Assembly (NCBI GenBank): GCA_037447605.1 | Contig: CM074805.1 | Coordinates: 3,753,361 to 3,817,360 of the forward strand | DNA: 64,000 nucleotides | Source: Zygnema circumcarinatum SAG 698-1b | Taxonomy: Eukaryota; Plantae; Zygnematophyceae | Direction: 5' to 3' | Shown: positions 5,659 through 52,161 of the stretch, in pieces | Layout: the number at the start of each line of letters is the position of its first letter | Position numbering within the stretch: position 1 is the first letter of the stretch | Notes under the pieces: generated by a model | The model's input: only the letters and a program-made list of their open reading frames with translations | Told to the model about the DNA's origin: nothing | Database searches by the model: none | Made by a program: the position numbers and the translations under genes

Positions 5659-7892
5659 ATGCAGATGGACTGCCCGCACTTGCACTATCTCCACAACTCT
5701 TTCCCGCCTCCTCCACCGTCCTCTCCCGCTTTCCATCTCGGCAGCCTATTCCTCTCTGAAAGCTCGAGCCCTTCCGGAGCATGTGAGAGAAGCAGCCCCG
5801 CATCTGCCCCTCCTCGCATCGCCGTCATTTGCCCCCCCCCGAGCCTGCTTTATCGCACAATTCAACCGTCGGATTTGGGGGTGCTGCAAGCACTTCACGA
5901 GGCTTTGTTCCCGATCAGGTCCGACATCAAACTCACTCCCAACCTATCCTCACAGTCAGCTCCCTAAGGAGCTCCATTCTGTCTGTTAGCAACTGCTTGT
6001 ACGTCAGATGTTGAAATGTGGGGCAGAAGAATGCCATCAAACGTTAACACTCTTTTTCCTGTGGCATAATAACTTTTCCTTCCCTCTTGGACTTGTTCTG
6101 ACCCAGCTCTTTAGGTGTTTCGCATTTCCTGGCAGATACGAACCGGAGTTTTTCACGAGTGTTGTCTATGGCCGCGGGATTGTGTCGTGGGCGGCGGTTG
6201 ATGCGGCATCGCCGGATGGCCTTGTGGGCTTCGTGACGGCGCGAGTTGCTTCTATCAATGAGAGCGAAGTGGGTTCGGCGAATTCTATGTTGCTGGAGGG
6301 AGATTTGGATGATTTGGCAGATGTTTGTTTGTAGCGTTGTGAGCATTGAAGCGCACTCAGCATTCAGTAGAGGAAGGGGCGTTGTTGGGTGTCGATTTGA
6401 ACCCATACTTGTGTGGAAAGCAAGTGCAGGGATCTAGTTTATGGCTCAAGATATGGCAAAATGAGTACAAGAATGGCATTAGGACATTAAAAAAAGAAAA
6501 AAAACCGTTATGTTTGGAGGTGGTAACCGACGCAAAGTTTAGGGCACACTTTCGTGCATGAACTTGTGCTGGAAGTGACATGGATTAAAGTGGATACTTT
6601 CCAACGTGTTCAACACAATCAGCTAGTTGTCCGCAAGACTTGAGCTTGCTTCAGTGCATAATCTACTGCTCTTCTTCCCTCTGACCTAACAAAATCTTAC
6701 TTGTATAGGTGCCTTTTTTCCAACCCACGATCATTACTATCTTCCTAACTGCCCAATTCGTGGAAGCTGCCTGTTTTCCCCTGCTGCTTAGCTGCCAGTT
6801 TCTCCACTTGAGCCGGTCCCTTACTGACTCTGAAAGCCCAAACTTATGCAGGAGGTGGACCTGCTCGGCTACGAGCTTGGGCAGAGTGAACGGCAGGTCA
6901 TTTACATTCTCACTCTGGGAGTAACCCAACCTTATCGAAAGCTGGGGATAGGTGAGTCCCCTCTCTTCTCCTCCCACCATTAGTGGGAGAGGGAAAACTA
7001 TGCACATACTGGCGACTTGGCCTTCGTCCGAGATGCTTTTTTCTCTGACAGAAGCAGTGGCAGTTTCTCACTATCCCCAGTGCTCTGTTGCTCCCAGCAT
7101 CCATGCTCATAGGGAAGGTGCTGGATTACGCTGCCAGCTGTCCTTCCTGCAGAGCTGTCTACCTTCATGTCATCGCATACAACCATGCGGCGATCCTGCT
7201 GTACAAAAAGAACCGTTTCCAATGTCTGAGGCGGCTCAGTGAATTTTACTTCATCGGCGGCAGTTTGTATGACGCCTACTTATATGTGTACTATGTAAAC
7301 GGGGGACGCCGGCCCTTCTCGACAACGTACGTTTCTACCTTAACCCTCCCCATCCTTTTGTTTGATGCAACTCCTTTGGAAAGCGGCATTCCATTCCATC
7401 CCCTCCATTCCACGCAAGCTGCCGCAAAATGCTGGCCTGCCCGCCTGCATTTTAGATGCACAATGTGCCGGCGAAACAAACAAACAAGCACGCATGCATG
7501 CATGCATGTCAAACATGAATGCTGCTTTCATAGCATGTAGCACGTGACTTCTTCCAGTTCTGCTGCTCCAACCAACCAACCAACCAACCAACCAACCAAC
7601 CAACCAACCAACCAACCAACCAACCAACCAACCAACCAACCAACCAACCAACAGCGCTCTGCCATGTGGCAGCAGCGACATTGTGGGGTCCGCCGGGTCC
7701 TTTCTGCGCAGCTTCGTGGCGGTGGTGGAGCGGCTCCTCTTCTCCCCCCGCGCGGAGGGGGACGAGAAGAGGAGGAGGAGGCGGCGGAGGGCCGCCACGT
7801 GGCCGCTCCTCCGCGCGGGGGACCTCTGGGCGGCCCTCTTCGGCCGCACCGCGCTGCCCTGCGGAGAGGCCGCCGCCGCCCCGTGCGTGTGA
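5659..7892 (+). CDS. NAA60: GNAT N-alpha-acetyltransferase 60 / MCC1-like; exons ~5659-5918, 6136-6268, 6852-6951, 7098-7326, 7676-7892
   Basis: Spliced reading gives [15 protein letters not shown]...LVGFVTAR...[21 protein letters not shown]...[50 protein letters not shown] junctions keep the frame. The start codon is less certain. Confidence 0.88.
7567..7652 (+). repeat. (ACCA)n microsatellite in the last NAA60 intron
   Basis: About 21 tandem ACCA units. Confidence 0.95.
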
Positions 7893-42810: not shown

Positions 42811-45800
42811 ATGGCCACAATGCAGGGCCGTCCTCATTTCAGGAGGAAGATAAGCCATTGGATTTCCTTAGGTTCCAAAGACAAGGACAAAGGGTTCTCG
42901 GAGAAGGGTATCCCTTCAAAGTATCAAAGCTCTCCACCTGATTTGAGTCTTTTCAATGATAAACTTCGGGCTAGTCAGCGGTCCCAGTCTCAACCTGAGC
43001 TACGGTCCGAACTGCATAACAATGATCCTATTACACCGCTTGAACGATCGCTTAGTGGAGATTTTGTTTCTGGGCTCCGGGAACATGCTGCAAAGAAGCC
43101 GGGAAGTCGGGCGGCTGAAGAAATAAGTGCTTTTGCTGGGGAAGTGTTTGTCTCAGAAGCAAGAGAACAGGCAGGGAGTGGCAGAGGCTCGCTTGATTCA
43201 CGATCCAACGGGGCTCTTCCACCTGCCTTTCGCCCTAGGAGCCCATGGCGAGGGAAACACGGGTCGCTTTTTAAGATAAAGGGAAAAACGGGCAGTCCGA
43301 CACCGGAATTGACTGGAAAAGAGGAAGTAAAGGGGAAGCTGCATAGCGTGGATGTGTTGAATGGAGAAGAAGACGGTGTAGTGCAGGAGGGCAGGACCGG
43401 AGAAGGCAAAGAAGGCAAATTCTGGGGTACTATTGGTAAGATCAGGACGAATGAGAAGAAAGTTCTTACTTATTCTGAGTCAGGGAGAATAGCAGCTAGT
43501 AAGACTGGGAGCCCTAAGGCACGGAAGACTATAGGCAGCCCAATTAGGAAGAAGGCCCAGTCGGTGAACAAGCCTCGGCGAGTGATTTCACTACTTGGAG
43601 CCGCAACAGAAGTGATTGGATTGTTGGGAATGGAGCATGTTTTGGTGGGAAGGTCCCACGAATGCACTCGGCCTGAATCGGTTGAGAGGCTGCCTTGTGT
43701 CAGCTCGCCAGCTATGGGGAAAGACCTTGATTGTGAATCCAGTGCAGGTATCGATGGCAAGGTGAGAGGCCTTTAAGAAAGCTAAGTTATAGTGCTGTTT
43801 TGTTCTGGTGGAACTGCAGTCAACGCGTCCGTATTAGTCAATCTGGGATAACTTTTTATGCTAGACCTTTGTTGTAATTTCACCCTCGTTTGACTCATTT
43901 GTTCGTACAGTTAGATACCAATCGTTTTCTGCAGAGGTTTACTAGACGTGGGATTCTTTCATGTCAGGATATGTTGAATGTACACTTTTCGTCACCCCTC
44001 CGTATTTTTCGTCTAAAACTATGTTGCTACTTTGGAAAAGCTTGTGGGCGGTGAATGTATTGCTTATTGGCTTAATTCTTTTTTTGCTGGCAAGGATGGG
44101 ATCAAATAGTGATGTTATAGTCAGTATAGAGGTGGGCTACAGGGAACGCCACAGTCGGTATGGCAGTTTTCTTCCGTTTGGTTGGGATAGTCGTGGGAAA
44201 GAATTGACAGGATGCGATGCAGCCCTTGCTTGTGAAAGGACCTGACAGCATAGCCGCTCATATTCTGAATGATGGTGTGTGGAGTGCAATGCCAGACAAC
44301 TCTCTCTCGGTGTGGTCAAGTGGTACTGAAACATTTGTCATCATTTTATCGCTTGATAGGCCACTCAACCTTGGAAGGAGGTGTTTGCACTGTAATTTCT
44401 CCCACATGTTCCCATTACTCTGGGTGTTATGGAATATCCTCCATTATAGACGAATCATGTGGGTAGCTTGCTGATTGAAAAACTCGTGGGAATGTAAACA
44501 CTGCAGGTTCAAGAGCTTTTGAAGAAGGGCCTTGCCCGCTACTCCCTCGACCTGCAAACCATGAGCGACCTGCAGCCCGACCTTATCATCACGCAGGATG
44601 CCTGCAGCGTGTGCGCCGTCTCCCTCGACGAACTCCAACAAGCAGCCGGAGAGTACCTCGCTGCTGCCGGACGGGCCTGCCAAATTCTCTCTCTGCAGCC
44701 CACCACTGTAAGTTCGAACCATTACCCCCCTTCATTGAATTCCTTTCCTCGTTGGCAGCATTGCATATAGGTGTTTTTATATGCAACACTATAAGAACAA
44801 AGCGTGCATATGGATCATCCTCCATTCGTCGTACGCTGCGTGCATCTCACCGTGTGTCTCCATGGCATTCGACAGGTGGCACACGTGTGGGAGAACATCC
44901 GGCAGATTGCGGATGCTTTGGGCGAACCTGAAAAGGGCGAAGCGCTTATGCACACACTGCAAAGCCGATGGGCGGCCGTGGAAGATCGCATTCCAACCAA
45001 TGCGGAGGCTCCGTCTGCAAACGTGGCATGCCTTCAGTGGCTGGACCCTCTAATGGGGGCAGGCTATTGGGTGCCTGAAATCGTCCAGTGTGCTGGGGGA
45101 ACGTGTGCAACAGGGCAGGTGGGTCTTAAATAAGAGACCGTACGCTGCATAAAGGAAGGAGTACTATTTCTTCTTTTGAAAGCTATTCTGCTTTAGGGAA
45201 ACTTCTTTTGCTTTCTCGCTTCTTACCATGTGTGAGTGCACTGGGTTTGCAGGCTGGAGAAGCTACCGGTGTGCTCAGCCTTGAGCAGCTTTTGAAAGTG
45301 GACCCGGAGATCATTGTTGTGATGTGTTGTGGATACGGACTAGATGCTGCAGCTCGTGAACTCAGCAACTTGGAACGGAAGAAGGAGTGGACTCGCCTGC
45401 GGGCAGTAGCTTCGGGACGCGTCTTCTTGGTAGATGGGTCCAGGTCAGCATTGGTTCACTCTGGGATAAGATTGTAGAGGAAAATCTGCTACTTCAGACA
45501 GCCATTTATCTTCTATTGACCTGGTATTTGTCTTATTGTTGGGCTCAACTTAGTTCATTTCTCAGGAAGAGGCTGACCCGTTTGCGTAACGTTCTGCAGA
45601 TATTTCAACTCCTCCGGCCCTGCTATTGTGGATTCGGCAGAACTTCTAGCAGAGATCTTGCATGGGTGGGAACTGGGATGCCATCTTTATGAAGGTGCGG
45701 GATTCATTAGGTGGAAGACGAGTGGGAGGGGTGTCTCTTCTCCTGCAAGAAGCAGGTCTCCTTCGAAACCTTCCCATGTGTTGGTTCTGAATGATGACCT

Positions 45801-48800
45801 CGAGGCAGCCCTCGACGGCTTCAGACTTCCCAAGGACTCTCCTCTCAATTGGATAAAAACTAGTACAAATTGGGACATGGAAATCAATGGCAAAGTCGCC
45901 GGCTTGAAGTTGGACGATGAGTCAGAGGATGCAGATCAGAGGAGGCACGAGGAGGCTGAGAGAGAGGTTGGTGAAGGCGGTAACCGTCAGCGGCGTGAAG
46001 GTGTAGTAGTTTCTTCAAGAAAGGGTGACTTAGTAGCTGAAGGTACTGGTTTTCTAGAGAGTTTAACACCCCGGAAAGGCTACAGAATTCCAGAGTATCT
46101 CGATGACACACAGCTTCTAGAAAGGCTTGCCGACGGCGTTTCTGTGAATGGGAGTGTGAACGGCAAAAGGGTTGAAAGCATAGACCTCGAAAAGGGAACT
46201 TTGGTGAAGGGTGGGATGCAAAAAAATGGATGGCTACAAGCGCCCAAGCCCCCCAAATGGGGCCCTCCATCGCCGACGGGTAGAGATTCAACACTGCACT
46301 GCCTCACAGCAGGGTCGAAGAATAATGCCCGTGAGGATGGTGAGTTAGGCGGCAGAGTGGGCCCCACAGAGGTCGGAGATGGGGAGGTCATGAGCAACCC
46401 AAGCAGCACACGTGGGATGACAGTGGGTCCACTGGTTGTCACGCAATTGGAAGGGGATGCAGCGGACCATGAAGAGAATACCCCAAATGCTGAGGCTGAT
46501 AAAGAGAAGGAGAATACAATTAGGAAGGCAGAAACTGGCGAGGGATCGGCTGTGAACCCTCACAGGGTCGAGGATGAACTTAAACTTCAGGAAATGCCGA
46601 ACGGTTCATCGATGGATCATGTCACAGTCAAGGATGTACATCCGTTAGACAACAGTTTGCCCAACCCGAACCCCTCCATGGCGTTGCGTACACTTCTACT
46701 GAAGGTGTTGTCTGATACTCTCCCAGCAGACTGCCTTCTATTGAGTGGAGGACTGGCCAGCGACGTGTTGGCTGAAGCCGCTTTAGAGATAGGCAAAGGA
46801 GGATTCAAAAGTGCCATTACAGTCGCATGTGGAGCAAAGGCTGCCGATCGACCCCACTCTACCGCAGTGGCCATGAAGACAGGGTTGCCGCAGATTGTTC
46901 TCTCCCAGCGGCCGATGGACCTCCTTGAAGCAGAGCTCAAGTTTGTTGTTCGGACTCTTCGCACTTTTGACCCCCTGGAGGTGAGCATTCCTTGGAATAA
47001 GCTTCATGAGTCTTCGTTCCCTGCAGCTTAATAGAGAAGGAAGACTGAATGTTTCGACGGAGAAACATTCAGCTGTTGTCACCTTGAATTGGCGGAATAG
47101 GTCATGGGGGATTGGTTTGTGTTGACTTCATGGCAATGGTTGAGAGAAGTGCAGGTCCGTTCCGGGTTGGCATTGGCGGGAGCATTGAGGATGGCCCAGC
47201 AGCAGGGCTTCACTTCAGTGGTAACAGGAGATGGAGCCGAAGAGCTTTTCACTGGGTATGAGAACCTACTGCACAGCGACCTGTTGGTGTTTTTCTTGGA
47301 TAACTACTATGTATTCGAGCTCAACAGGGTAACAGACAATGCCCAAAGGTAGAGGGAAGAAGGCTCATTTCCCGTGTGTTTTCTTTATCTTGATTTGGGA
47401 ATGTGCGCGTTGCTGGCAGATACGGATTCATGGCCAAAATGACGGAGCCGAAGCTGCAGGAATGTCGGCAGCATATGGTGGAGTATTTGCGCTATCCCGT
47501 GGTAGCACTTGGAGAGGCCTTGGGGCTTGAGGTTAGCTCAACTTACCTTGTAGGGCTTATGGGGAAAGGGATGTGCGGGCTATTGGCTCCTTCCTTTCCC
47601 GTTGGCTAGCGGTATAGGAGATGCATACAGGGTGATAATGGTGGAGCTGCTGCCTTGGAGACTGCTATCATGGTCCTTCTGAATTTCATAGGACATTGTC
47701 ATCAGAGGGTGTGACTTAGTGGAGGTGTGCTTTTTATGCGGATCTTTTGCACCATGTATGTGTGTCTTGGCTGTTAACTTTTGTGTGTCTGGATGAGAAT
47801 CAGGTTCGACAGCCTTTCCTTCATAAAGACATACGGCGGTTCGCTTTAGGATTGAGCAAGGTAGAGCTTATGGGAGAGAATTTCGCTGGAGAAGGTGATG
47901 GTCCAGCAGGAAAGCTTTTACTGCGGCAGGCATTCCCGGAAGTCTATGCTGCTGGCCGACAAAAGGAGCAGATTGAGGTGCTTATCTCTGTTCTTCCCTT
48001 AATGGCTAAATCTTATAGAACTTTAGAAAAATCTGGACAGTTGAGGGCATACGGCATGTATGTTTTTACAGTTAGACGAATCCCTACTTCTTAGCCTTTT
48101 CTGACAAGCTTTGTCTCCTCTTCTCATCCAGGTGGGAGCAGGGACTGCTTCTTTGAAGCGTACCCTATCCCGACGGATAAGCCCCGATGAGTTCCGTATG
48201 GAGAAAATGCGCATTAGAAAAGAAGACCGCATTCGATTGCGAGATGCTGAGCAGCTGCACTATTACCGCGCTTTCCGGACTGTCGTAGGGGGACCCGACC
48301 TTGCAGGTGTTGTGAGGTTTGGCCCGGAGGCATGCGTTGCCTGCGGATATCCCCCCATGTTTGCAGACCAGCTCGTCTGCAGCACCTGTGGGGAATATCC
48401 GGCAAGGAAAGCAAGCAGGGGCGGAGAAAGCAATAAACAAGCAACCCCTGAAGCAGGTCACAGCATGCAGGAGAGCAAAGCGAAGGTGGGGGGTGGGGGA
48501 ATTCAGGGCCGGAATGTGCCTAAATCAGTCCCAGTCAGTAGTGAGGGTAGGGACAGTCGGAGGGGGGCAGAGACCGACGGTAAGAATGTTAGCGAGTATG
48601 GGAGGCGTGCTGTTGGAGGCGGGCTTAAGGGCAGTACATTCGTGGATTCTCATTCAAAGGTTGCTTCTGGGCTTGGAGAGCGGTTGCAAGTCAAGACAAC
48701 AGATCGAGGGGGACGTGAGTCGAACGTCATAGTGGGGGAGGATTGTTCGACAGAATGCTTGAAGTCATCTGCCCAAGGAAAGAGAGGGAGCGGACCTTGT

Positions 48801-49151
48801 CAGTATCACAATGGAAAGATTGGAGGAGGTTGGACACGTCTCAACCCCACGGCAGGGCAGGCACTGGACCTGTGGGGGCTGCTTGAAGGGGCAGGGAAAA
48901 CATTAATGGAGGCGGGGAAGGGGGGTGCGTTGGAAGATCAGGGGGTAGGGGCCCTATTGGAAAGCATTGATAACGGTCTGGGAGCGTGGCATGAGATGAT
49001 TTATGGTGATAGCGAGGCAAGCTCAGAGGGTGGGTCAGTGATTGAGATCGATTTTGGAAGCAGAACGGAGTCAGAAGGGGATGAGGAGGGGCGGGGAGAG
49101 GTGGATCATGAGCGGATGGAAAATGGAGGTGAGTGCCAAGGGAACATATGA
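42811..49151 (+). CDS. Multidomain protein: disordered N-terminus + BtuF/cobalamin-Fe-siderophore-binding (class III SBP) domain + disordered linker + asparagine-synthetase-like PP-loop domain + CxxC..CxxC Zn ribbon; exons ~42811-43761, 44507-44707, 44876-45118, 45253-45443, 45600-46980, 47155-47255, 47420-47531, 47804-47977, 48132-49151
   Basis: SBP motifs: RVISLLGAATEVI..LG....LVGRSHEC, PDLIITQDACSVCAVS, CLQWLDPLMGAGYWVPE, DPEIIVVMCCGY, LRAVASGRVFLVDG.RYFNSSGP. Synthetase-like motifs: LLLSGGLAS, VVTGDGAEELFTGY, EVRQPFL, GKLLLRQAF, RQKEQIEVGAG. Zn ribbon: CVACG..CSTCG. All GT-AG joins are in frame, and the two domains are linked within one exon (45600-46980). Confidence 0.85.
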
Positions 49152-51064
49152 CACGACTTTTTCCCTTGAGACTGGGGTTTCCGTTAATTGTGAAACTTTG
49201 GGTAACCCCTTAATCCTGTTAATGTATTAATTGTGACAGGCAATATGGAGGGATCGAAGTCTGCATTTGTGCCTGCAAGGAGCATTTTGAGGACTTCATC
49301 GCCGGTCGTCTCTTCAACAATCTCGGGTCGATTACCATTTCCGAGACAACAGGGTCGTTAAACCGTGATTTTCTTCGGAGGGGCCACCCTAGGGAAGTCG
49401 AGGGTGGATAAGAGAGCACACATGGAACGGAAGTGATTCCAAATCCATGTTTGGAACTCTGACAGTCCCTCTTAATAATCGGCTCTCGTCCGCACCACGT
49501 GTGACCAGGAAACATGGAGAAAATCCTTCCATGTCCTGGAACCTGGAAAAATGGAGGAACGTGTAGATGCTAGCACTAGTGGGCTCCAATTTCTGCCCGT
49601 TTTCCTTTTCAATTCTTTTGCACCACTCCGGCATGGAAACTCCGGACCTTTTTTCGATTTCGGTTTGTTTTTCAGTTCGTATATTCTTTTTGTGGAGGGG
49701 ACATGCTAAAGGAGAAGATAGTGGGGTGAGCAGGGGGTTGTGGGCACCACGGTACCGGGGAAGGAATAAGGCTCAGCCAGTTGGAGGTGTTGGACGCGCA
49801 TGGCTAAGGGACAGAGAGGAGCTCTGCCGGAAAAGGTGTTGGAAGGGAGCCCTGCTGGTTTCCATCGCCCTTATAAGCCGGCGGCTGCATGGACCAGGCT
49901 GTGGAGCCACCTAGTAATAACGTAAATAAGTCGCGTCTTTACAAAGTTGGTTAGTTGGTTAGACGCTTTCTATGGCTCAGTGACTATCCTCGTTTGTAAC
50001 GGATGTGGCTGAAAGGAATGCCGCATCCGTCTAGTAGGAGCTCAGGGAAAACTAGAAGCGGAGCAGAAGAATGCCCGCAATACTCGTCGTTTATGGGAAG
50101 CATGTGCTGGAGACATGACCCGCGTTCATGGTTCTCTTGTTTGTGGACTTGCACTGAACCGAGCTGCAGACGCATGTTCTTGCAGCATTTTCTGGCACTT
50201 TAGTTTCTGCGCAAAGCTTTCCGTCACCGTTGTCATCACGAGTGCATGTGTCAGGCTTGCTCTACTGCTGATCCTCTAAATCGCATTGGGGAAAATGGCA
50301 CAAATGGGATCCACGCAGCATGTTGTCATCTGATCGGCCCACTGCACCAAGGTTCGAAGCCGCATATAAGTTCGCAGTGCATTTGTGCGGAGTAAAAACT
50401 TACAATCATGCAAATTGCGCTTACCATACTGTAAAGCATGACCTATGCAGCTTCACCCCAAGAGAAGATCTGTTGGTGCCACTTGGCAGGTCTTGCTGAT
50501 AATCGCTACAAGACTTGCCAACTCAACTACACATGGGCGTGCAGTGTACCACAGACAGCTTTGTCTGACTGCAAGTTCAGTTAGCCGACTTCGTCACTAG
50601 TTTCGAACTTTGAATGCTGACGAAATGCCGGCGTAAAGCGTGGATTCAAAAATTTGCCATGTGCGCCAGCCGCATTCAATAAGATTCCATTTCAGCTTTT
50701 GCGTGTACATTCGAACACCACCGTTGCTTTTAGTTCTACCAACCAAAGCTGAGTACCACCAAGGAAATGGAAACAATAAAGCAATTGCGATAGGCTGAGC
50801 ACAGCACAACGCAGAGCAGAAACTTGGTGACGATACACGCAAAACCATACAGAAAGAAACAGCCCATGACAAGTAGCCGTAGCTGATGCCTTCAATATCC
50901 CTTTTCTCCCGTTCAAAACAAGGGGCTCTTTACCACAACACGGCAATCTAAACGAACGGATGGATCTGGAGCTGCAAGTGTGAGCATGAATTCCAACCCC
51001 ACATTAGGAGAAGGTGGCCCCTTGAGAACCACAGTCGCACAAGGTTCCGAGGAGTGATTGGCAT

Positions 51065-52161
51065 TTACTCCTCCGCTTCCTCCTCCACAGCCTTCATCTG
51101 CCCCTTCTTGGCATATCTCTGGTTTCGCAAGAACTTCGGGTCCATCTGTTCACAACAGGAGAAACTTAATGAGAAATGCGGAGAAACAGTGGACAAACTA
51201 CGAAATGGCACTCCAGGGATTAAGTTTCTCAAGACCTTTCAGTGAGTGAATGGGAAGCCAACTAGTCCAGACAAAAGCACTTTCTGCTGTTCCTGCTAAA
51301 TATACGAACAGCATGCACCAGTGAATACTTTAGAGCAGACCTATTCCCGACAGGTTATCTATTGCCATTAGGCTGTTCCTGACAATCTAAAGGAGGCAGA
51401 TTTTGCGAACGCTGAAAGGGACGACACCCGTGGTTCGACAAGACAATAAAATGTTAAATGCTGAAGGACCTTGACATAAGCAACACTAATGTGTACCCGT
51501 CCAGCCAGGCAACAGGTAACTACACGGTTTGTTGAGGACGATGTTTATCAGCAATCCTACTCGAAATCTTTTGGGCATAAACGGACAATACTGCAGCGAC
51601 AAGGTGATGATTCCCAGCCCCTAGTTCTAAGGCAGTGTTTGAATGTCCTCTGAAAGCGAGCCCTGAACTCTGCTCAGCAGCCAACTGTTTACCAAAGTAG
51701 TAGAAATCGGAATCGATGAAAGAAGCCATTTTAAAAATATTGCCCTTCTAATTGACTTAGGATAAGAAAAACTTAGCTTCCCTTGCACTTCCACATACAA
51801 TTTTCCTGACAAGTGACACCACTAAAGTTCTGAAATACCCCCGCTTACTTAAAGCTCTTAATTTTCGAAGCAAATCGAAAAACAAAAAAAATGATGAACT
51901 TTCTTAGCTGCACACTGACGAGGGCCCGACAAACTCTACAAACACCATCAGGCGGCAACGTCAAAGGCCAAAACTAGTGTCCCTCTTGCGATACCTTCGC
52001 CAAGACAAGATCACCCAAGAACTACAACCATCAAATAGAGGAAATGAAGTAGCACTCACCCCCCGGCGGCTGGGATACTTATTCCGCTTAGGCTTCTTGA
52101 TTCCATTCTTGTGCTGCTTGTAGGTCTGATTGTGCGCCGTGTGATTTTTTGACTTGGCCAT
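51065..52161 (-). CDS. RPL29: 60S ribosomal protein L29 (eL29); exons 52161-52060 and 51145-51065, plus a 5'UTR intron
   Basis: [25 protein letters not shown]...G|[14 protein letters not shown]. Confidence 0.97.

What the first reader, a model, noticed from the sequence alone, without database searches (positions are those of the whole stretch)
42811..49151. Intron-containing fusion of a prokaryotic-type BtuF (B12/metal-chelate) binding domain with an asparagine-synthetase-like PP-loop domain and Zn ribbon
Seen: the spliced ORF carries a complete BtuF-like class III solute-binding domain (SHEC, TQDACSVCAV, QWLDP..GYWVPE, CCGY), then a glutaminase-less Asn-synthetase-type adenylation domain and CxxC-x10-CxxC, separated by long disordered linkers. 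The domain junction lies inside a single exon, so it is not a gene-merging artefact. Known: BtuF-type proteins are normally exported ABC-transporter subunits of prokaryotes, and many algae use B12 while land plants do not. Inference: no signal peptide is apparent, so this may be an intracellular corrinoid/metal-chelate sensor or modifying enzyme, possibly from domesticated HGT. I do not know this architecture as a characterised protein.
Basis: partly seen in the sequence, partly recalled or inferred. Interest (0 to 1): 0.85.

Follow-up and report, generated by a model that had tools for sequence, protein, structure and literature searches.

The report
Green-plant vitamin B12 repair-like fusion gene
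This alga expresses one gene that joins a vitamin-B12-gripping part to an amide-making enzyme part. Microbes keep both parts among their B12 salvage genes, which points to an undescribed B12 repair step, although this alga's enzyme part looks switched off.

Summary
Spliced transcript contigs from two studies confirm the introns, and one contig spans both domains. The fusion is old and not unique. It occurs in Prasinoderma, Chara, Closterium, a lycophyte and ferns. The missing signal peptide is inherited: the prokaryotic kin are a cytoplasmic, Cys-rich BtuF-like subfamily. In prokaryotes the two halves are often neighbouring genes, beside cobyrinate diamide synthase CobB, DUF71-B12 and B12 transporters, some under cobalamin riboswitches. 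Stand-alone eukaryotic copies of the enzyme half occur in B12-using lineages. Best reading (about 0.5): a corrinoid side-chain amidation or repair module, in which the binding domain presents the corrinoid. In this alga both Mg-binding aspartates are changed (D>A, D>E; invariant in stand-alone kin), yet the domain is strongly conserved. This copy is therefore probably a B12-binding pseudoenzyme. Chara, Prasinoderma and one land-plant-like copy are intact. I found no paper on the family or the fusion. The scan earlier noted the changed residues in this window and a parallel CobB–BtuF-like fusion elsewhere in this genome; I did not check that second gene. No activity has been shown.

The parts
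42811..49361 (+). Whole coding span, 10 exons, 1490 aa
42811..43761 (+). Exon 1: about 253-aa disordered Ser/Pro/Lys-rich N-terminus with no signal peptide, then the start of the BtuF-like domain (RSHEC at aa 281-285)
43570..45717 (+). Cytoplasmic Cys-rich BtuF-like (class III binding) domain, aa 254-568, over exons 1-5; motifs SHEC, QxxCxVC, QWLDP, GYWVPE, CCGY all intact
   Evidence: fold of P0001 domain pLDDT 92 matches heme/B12 binding proteins
44507..44707 (+). Exon 2 (TQDACSVCAV)
44876..45118 (+). Exon 3 (QWLDP, GYWVPE); Peripla_BP_2 E 8.9e-5
45253..45443 (+). Exon 4 (CCGY); Peripla_BP_2 E 1.6e-6
45600..46980 (+). Exon 5: end of the binding domain, about 310-aa disordered linker with short conserved islands, and start of the Asn-synthetase-like domain
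46681..48407 (+). Glutaminase-less asparagine-synthetase-like PP-loop domain with C-terminal Zn ribbon, about aa 890-1210, exons 5-9
46756..46758 (+). Ala915 in place of the PP-loop Asp (E. coli AsnB D238 equivalent)
47155..47255 (+). Exon 6; contains Glu1018 (47239-47241) in place of the Asp equivalent to AsnB D351
47420..47531 (+). Exon 7
47804..47977 (+). Exon 8; contains RQKEQ, with the Lys equivalent to AsnB K449 retained
48132..49128 (+). Exon 9: end of the enzyme domain, Zn ribbon (48333-48389), disordered tail, and a conserved acidic island at aa 1368-1442 (48879-49103)
49240..49361 (+).
   Evidence: loose end at 49129 in 4 runs maps to 49240/49241 after AG

Best explanation
The gene is an inherited green-plant fusion of two parts of an undescribed corrinoid salvage module. 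In intact members (prokaryotic gene pairs, Prasinoderma, Chara, P0040), the cytosolic Cys-rich BtuF-like domain binds an imported corrinoid. The PP-loop domain adenylates a free side-chain carboxylate with ATP and amidates it with ammonia, restoring de-amidated or incompletely amidated B12. It would do the b/d/e propionate work normally done by CbiP/CobQ, while its frequent neighbour CobB does the a,c acetates. In this alga the enzyme half has lost both Mg-binding Asp but stays strongly conserved. It most likely works as a non-catalytic or weakly catalytic B12-binding chaperone, sensor or scaffold. Shown: gene, expression, domains, distribution, gene context and residue changes. Inferred: ligand, chemistry, amidation site and loss of activity.
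For: Adjacent genes for the two halves in Thermoplasmata, Chloroflexi, a gammaproteobacterial MAG and a Bathyarchaeon, and in L163, L165 and L167. CobB above the NCBIfam cut-off sits next to or within three genes of the enzyme gene in 4 of 6 further loci. Other neighbours: DUF71/Diphthami_syn_2 (published as a B12-salvage subgroup, PMC3541065), BtuCD/BtuF, TonB receptor, DUF6580, and BtuR/CobU/CobS. Cobalamin riboswitches lie upstream in L005, L012, L168, L170 and in 5 of 15 binding-domain loci. The same binding domain is fused to DUF71 in bacteria (TM 0.92). Named stand-alone eukaryotic hits are non-Dikarya fungi, oomycetes and a dictyostelid, the lineages reported to use B12 (PMC8085122). 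Side-chain de-amidation is a known way for B12 to lose activity (PMC9822362). The PP-loop Asp is present in 204 of 204 stand-alone homologues where the motif was matched (5 of 209 unmatched), and the second Asp in 211 of 211. The altered domain is 77% identical to P0001, against 42% for the linker.
Against: No biochemical data exist for either half. About 50 thaumarchaeal loci and several other archaeal loci, which are more distant members, show no B12 neighbours. None of 80 loci chosen by the binding domain had the enzyme gene nearby. No glutaminase is fused, so the nitrogen source is assumed. Lycophyte and fern copies persist although vascular plants reportedly lost B12 metabolism (10.1101/2023.06.07.544158). 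Fold hits cannot separate B12 from heme or siderophore binding. Several neighbourhood loci are related Thermoplasmata and so are not independent.
Confidence: 0.5

Rival explanations
1. The module is corrinoid-linked but does different amide chemistry: cleaving or re-attaching the nucleotide-loop amide at side chain f (CbiZ/CbiB-like remodelling of pseudo-B12), as proposed for DUF71-B12.
For: DUF71-B12 is a frequent neighbour and was proposed to replace CbiZ (PMC3541065). L023 places the enzyme gene between CobU/CobS and btuFCD. Algae are known to remodel B12.
Against: The AsnB fold is a ligase fold. Its most specific neighbour is the side-chain amidase CobB. CbiB was not seen among the annotated neighbours.
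Confidence: 0.2
2. In this alga and in ferns the protein has been co-opted for a B12-independent signalling or scaffolding role (metal, redox or nucleotide sensing), and the B12 link is only ancestral.
For: Catalytic Asp lost in Zygnematophyceae-like, lycophyte and fern copies. Ferns also lose the QxxCxxC and CG motifs. Land-plant copies gain a C-terminal membrane anchor. Long linkers carry conserved islands.
Against: The window's binding domain keeps every Cys motif. Zygnematophyceae are reported to keep METH. This rival is compatible with the best explanation for the ancestral role.
Confidence: 0.2
3. The enzyme half is an ammonia-dependent asparagine synthetase, or the binding half is a heme, siderophore or cobalt/Fe-S binder unrelated to B12, and the B12 context is incidental.
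For: Closest solved structure is AsnB. Top fold hits of the binding domain include heme-binding proteins. Thaumarchaeal members lack B12 neighbours.
Against: Repeated riboswitch control and clustering with CobB, DUF71 and btu genes in unrelated phyla. The AsnB TT-x-R Asp-binding segment (role recalled from memory) reads PMELRN in this family.
Confidence: 0.1

Closest known systems
BtuF / class III (helical-backbone) solute-binding proteins, PF01497
   Same: Fold (best Foldseek hits E about 1e-16 to 1e-13, TM by query 0.64-0.72, to heme-binding proteins and BtuF) and Pfam family
   Different: No signal peptide or lipobox; 14-20% identity; subfamily-specific HEC, QxxCxVC and PCG motifs; far below the NCBIfam BtuF cut-off; fused to an enzyme
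Asparagine synthetase B synthetase domain / beta-lactam synthetase (PF00733)
   Same: PP-loop adenylation fold (1CT9, E 2e-35 by profile, TM 0.69); Lys449 equivalent kept
   Different: No glutaminase domain; added Zn ribbon; different substrate loop; D238 and D351 equivalents replaced in this copy
DUF71-B12 (COG2102 subgroup; PMC3541065)
   Same: A PP-loop amide ligase relative clustered with B12 salvage genes; neighbour of both halves; fused to the same binding domain in bacteria
   Different: A different PP-loop family; prokaryotic; its function is also only predicted
CbiP/CobQ cobyric acid synthase and CbiA/CobB
   Same: Proposed reaction (corrin side-chain amidation); CobB is a recurring neighbour
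   Different: Unrelated fold (dethiobiotin-synthase-like plus glutaminase; own knowledge); act in de novo synthesis; no CobQ match for this domain
Algal CBA1
   Same: An algal B12-acquisition protein, described from memory as periplasmic-binding-like
   Different: CBA1 acts in uptake and is not reported as an enzyme fusion; sequence relation not tested

Membership tests
PF01497 Peripla_BP_2 (class III binding fold) | HMM score above the gathering threshold and two-lobe helical-backbone fold | tested here: met
   exon 4 alone 28.2 > 27.5; P0001 64.3; fold
BtuF equivalog (PRK03379) | NCBIfam cut-off 234 | tested here: not met
   homologues score about 23; no hit listed for P0001
BtuF equivalog (PRK03379) | Exported (signal peptide or lipoprotein) partner of BtuCD | tested here: not met
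   no N-terminal hydrophobic segment; the subfamily lacks leaders
BtuF equivalog (PRK03379) | Binds cobalamin | not testable with these tools
   context only
Cytoplasmic Cys-rich BtuF-like subfamily (annotated 'cobalamin-binding protein') | SHEC, QxxCxVC, GxWxPE and CG(F/Y/W) motifs; about 40% identity to members; no leader | tested here: met
Asparagine synthase B (PRK09431 / TIGR01536) | N-terminal class II glutaminase and score above cut-off | tested here: not met
   P0001 scores 64.5 vs 499 and 39 vs 267; no glutaminase found
Asparagine synthase B (PRK09431 / TIGR01536) | SGGxD PP-loop Asp and the D351-equivalent Asp | tested here: not met
   A915 and E1018
Short AsnB-like + Zn-ribbon family (archaea, fungi, oomycetes, amoebozoa) | Clade membership, FDPxExR, GDG/A, IRDxE, C-terminal CxxC..CxxCG | tested here: met
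   45 of 54 near-invariant columns kept; nests in the eukaryotic clade
Short AsnB-like + Zn-ribbon family (archaea, fungi, oomycetes, amoebozoa) | Catalytic aspartates intact | tested here: not met
CbiP/CobQ cobyric acid synthase | TIGR00313 / PRK00784 match | tested here: not met
   no such hit for P0001, P0040, P0058, P0215, P0014
CBA1 | Sequence family membership | not tested

The most novel reading that the evidence does not exclude
There is an unrecognised vitamin B12 repair pathway, present in archaea, bacteria, early fungi, oomycetes, amoebae and green plants. A cytoplasmic Cys-rich binding protein hands hydrolysed (inactive) cobamides to a set of amide ligases (this AsnB-like enzyme, CobB, DUF71), which rebuild the side-chain amides. 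Green plants fused carrier and enzyme near their origin and later turned the fusion into a pseudoenzyme in several lineages, including vascular plants that no longer use B12.
Probability: 0.4. Interest if true: 0.88.

Novelty: new variant of a known kind. Interest (0 to 1): 0.74.

Why it matters
B12 limits many algae, and no eukaryote makes it. An enzyme that re-amidates spent or incomplete corrinoids would be a new metabolite-repair route, would widen the pool of usable B12 in nature, and could explain why non-producers carry CobB without the rest of the pathway. It assigns a testable job to two large families now mislabelled 'asparagine synthase' and 'ABC substrate-binding protein'. It also adds a gene to the B12 toolkit of land-plant ancestors, one kept in ferns and a lycophyte after B12 use was lost.

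Tried and rejected
Gene-merging artefact: rejected by spliced contigs and by 7 of 7 intron positions and phases shared with a homologous gene. Species-specific or recent transfer: rejected by distribution and trees. One operon transferred whole: not supported, because the plant binding domain groups with the main bacterial set (support 96) rather than with the Thermoplasmata genes next to the enzyme (long branches make the root unsure). Prokaryotic fusion in L005: rejected; the 942-codon ORF runs through an N gap and over three separate genes. RNA editing restoring the Asp codons: no differences in the contigs. Pfam on the N-terminal and C-terminal regions: no hits. Paper searches for the fusion, DUF6580/DUF5522, an Asn synthase under a cobalamin riboswitch, or cobamide re-amidation found nothing relevant; the library lacks most subscription journals. 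The long-protein search found only 3 fusions because it needs exact shared words, so absence from mosses, seed plants or chlorophytes is not shown. One search had a coordinate slip for exon 7 and was redone. The joined model was used only inside local scripts, built from window coordinates.

Full report
Gene model. The region holds one plus-strand gene. Nine exons from ATG 42811 translate without a stop and with GT-AG introns. Contigs of four public runs from two studies skip exactly these eight introns, with no letter differences. One 4251-nt contig carries both domains; these runs are unlabelled assemblies, but clean intron skipping shows they are spliced RNA. A loose end at 49129 in all four runs maps to 49240, which reveals a tenth exon, so the protein is 1490 aa and ends at 49361. 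The inter-domain linker lies within exon 5. Layout: disordered aa 1-253, binding domain 254-568, linker to about 880, Asn-synthetase-like domain with Zn ribbon to about 1210, disordered tail. P0001, a close relative returned by a tool, stood in for it.

The fusion is old. Exon 5 searched against 1.84 billion representatives gave seven long relatives, all with Peripla_BP_2 plus Asn_synthase above cut-off. Named ones are Closterium, Chara braunii, Diphasiastrum and Adiantum; a further one is Prasinoderma coloniale, which has a short linker and an extra N-terminal binding domain. All green-plant binding domains, Prasinoderma included, form one clade (SH-aLRT 100). The streptophyte enzyme domains form a clade (99), and adding Prasinoderma to it is not rejected (AU p 0.385). 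All seven introns of a land-plant-like homologue match window introns in position and phase. One fusion event near the base of green plants is the simplest reading, though not proven. The window's nearest kin are P0001 and Closterium, which suggests a zygnematophycean alga.

Binding half. Its relatives are at least 1268 proteins, about 40% identical and about 305 aa long; after a few Closterium hits, the named ones among the best 120 are prokaryotic and auto-named 'cobalamin-binding protein'. They start directly with the domain (median residue 2) and share HEC, QxxCxVC, GxWxPE and PCG motifs. The predicted fold (pLDDT 92) is the class III binding fold of heme-binding proteins and BtuF, at 14-20% identity. 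So this is a distinct cytoplasmic subfamily and not BtuF proper. In bacteria it is also fused to DUF71/Diphthami_syn_2 and to DUF5522. Five of 15 loci with long flanks have a cobalamin riboswitch upstream, as does L170.

Enzyme half. It belongs to a family of about 330 aa, glutaminase-less AsnB-like proteins with a C-terminal Zn ribbon. The family occurs stand-alone in archaea, some bacteria, Mortierellales, Umbelopsis, chytrids, Coemansia, Saprolegniales and Acytostelium. No Dikarya appear among the named best 120 hits. That matches the reported range of B12 use (PMC8085122), though it is a best-hit list and not a census. The plant domains nest among these eukaryotic genes (support 85), sister to a largely Thermoplasmata clade (joint support 99).

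Gene context. Of 80 genome loci, six have the Cys-rich binding gene directly beside the enzyme gene, and nine have B12-module neighbours by my probes. The rest, about 50 of them Thaumarchaeota on a distant branch, have none. All six further loci, chosen only for similarity and contig length, lie in a B12 context: for example DUF4430-DUF6580-enzyme-CobB-binding protein (L163), btuCDF/CobB/binding protein/enzyme (L165), and riboswitch-TonB receptor-DUF6580-enzyme-DUF71 (L168). The CbiA-like neighbours pass the CobB cut-off. L012 reads riboswitch-TonB receptor-DUF6580-enzyme-binding protein-DUF71. L023 puts the enzyme between BtuR/CobU/CobS and btuFCD-like genes. Ring-synthesis genes were not seen in these flanks, so this is salvage context. 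DUF71-B12 has been predicted to act in B12 salvage (PMC3541065); the passages I read in that paper did not describe these two families as part of it.

Mechanism (inferred). AsnB-type domains adenylate a carboxylate and attack it with an amine (established knowledge). B12 carries seven side-chain amides whose hydrolysis gives inactive acids (PMC9822362). CobB amidates a and c; CbiP/CobQ amidates b, d, e and g (own knowledge), and CobQ was not among the annotated neighbours. A module of carrier plus CobB plus this ligase plus DUF71, placed behind B12 importers, fits re-amidation of damaged or incomplete corrinoids.

State of this copy. Stand-alone homologues keep the PP-loop Asp (204 of 204 matched) and the second Asp (211 of 211). 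The window has Ala915 and Glu1018, and also N992S and W1111G. Chara, Prasinoderma and P0040 keep both Asp; Closterium, the lycophyte and ferns have lost the first. Yet the domain is 77% identical to P0001, more than the binding domain (65%) or the linker (42%), so it is maintained and not decaying. Land-plant copies add a C-terminal hydrophobic anchor, and ferns lose the binding-domain cysteines. Vascular plants are reported to have lost B12 metabolism (10.1101/2023.06.07.544158). This suggests repeated conversion to a non-catalytic role.

Verdict. A real, expressed and ancient green-plant fusion for which I found no description. A B12 link for the family is well supported by context (about 0.8). 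The specific re-amidation chemistry is a hypothesis (about 0.4-0.5). This alga's copy is probably a pseudoenzyme with an intact corrinoid-type binding domain.

Noticed in passing
window 48879-49103 (+): A 75-aa acidic stretch (aa 1368-1442) in the disordered tail is nearly identical in P0001, and traces appear in Closterium; no Pfam match; a possible interaction motif.
   Followed up: partly
L172:8001-9478 (Closterium NIES-68): Closterium also has stand-alone copies of the Cys-rich binding domain, with no enzyme domain within 8 kb downstream; they are close paralogues of the fused domain.
   Followed up: partly
P0058 (Prasinoderma coloniale) aa 27-242: A second, Cys-free Peripla_BP_2 domain precedes the fusion, echoing prokaryotic clusters that hold both a canonical BtuF and the Cys-rich protein.
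   Followed up: partly
P0040, P0051, P0005, P0006 C-termini: Land-plant-type copies end in a hydrophobic segment plus basic residues (tail-anchor-like); the algal copies do not.
   Followed up: partly
L161/L171 (SRR33208242/41): A fully intact fusion (54 of 54 conserved columns) from an unidentified land-plant-like organism with 89-174 bp introns; it would be the best land-plant candidate for assays if it is a hornwort or liverwort.
   Followed up: no
L028-L080 (mostly Thaumarchaeota): Thaumarchaeal members of the enzyme family sit in a conserved non-B12 neighbourhood; they may be a functionally separate branch.
   Followed up: no
L012: The MAG is labelled Gammaproteobacteria, but its enzyme pairs tightly with an Acidobacteria protein (P0284); possible mis-binning or transfer.
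   Followed up: no
window about 51961-52161 (-): The start of a ribosomal protein L29 (eL29)-like gene, recognised from memory; ordinary.
   Followed up: no
window about 6100-7300 (+): Exon pieces resembling a NAA60-type N-acetyltransferase, seen in a mis-set translation; probably ordinary.
   Followed up: no
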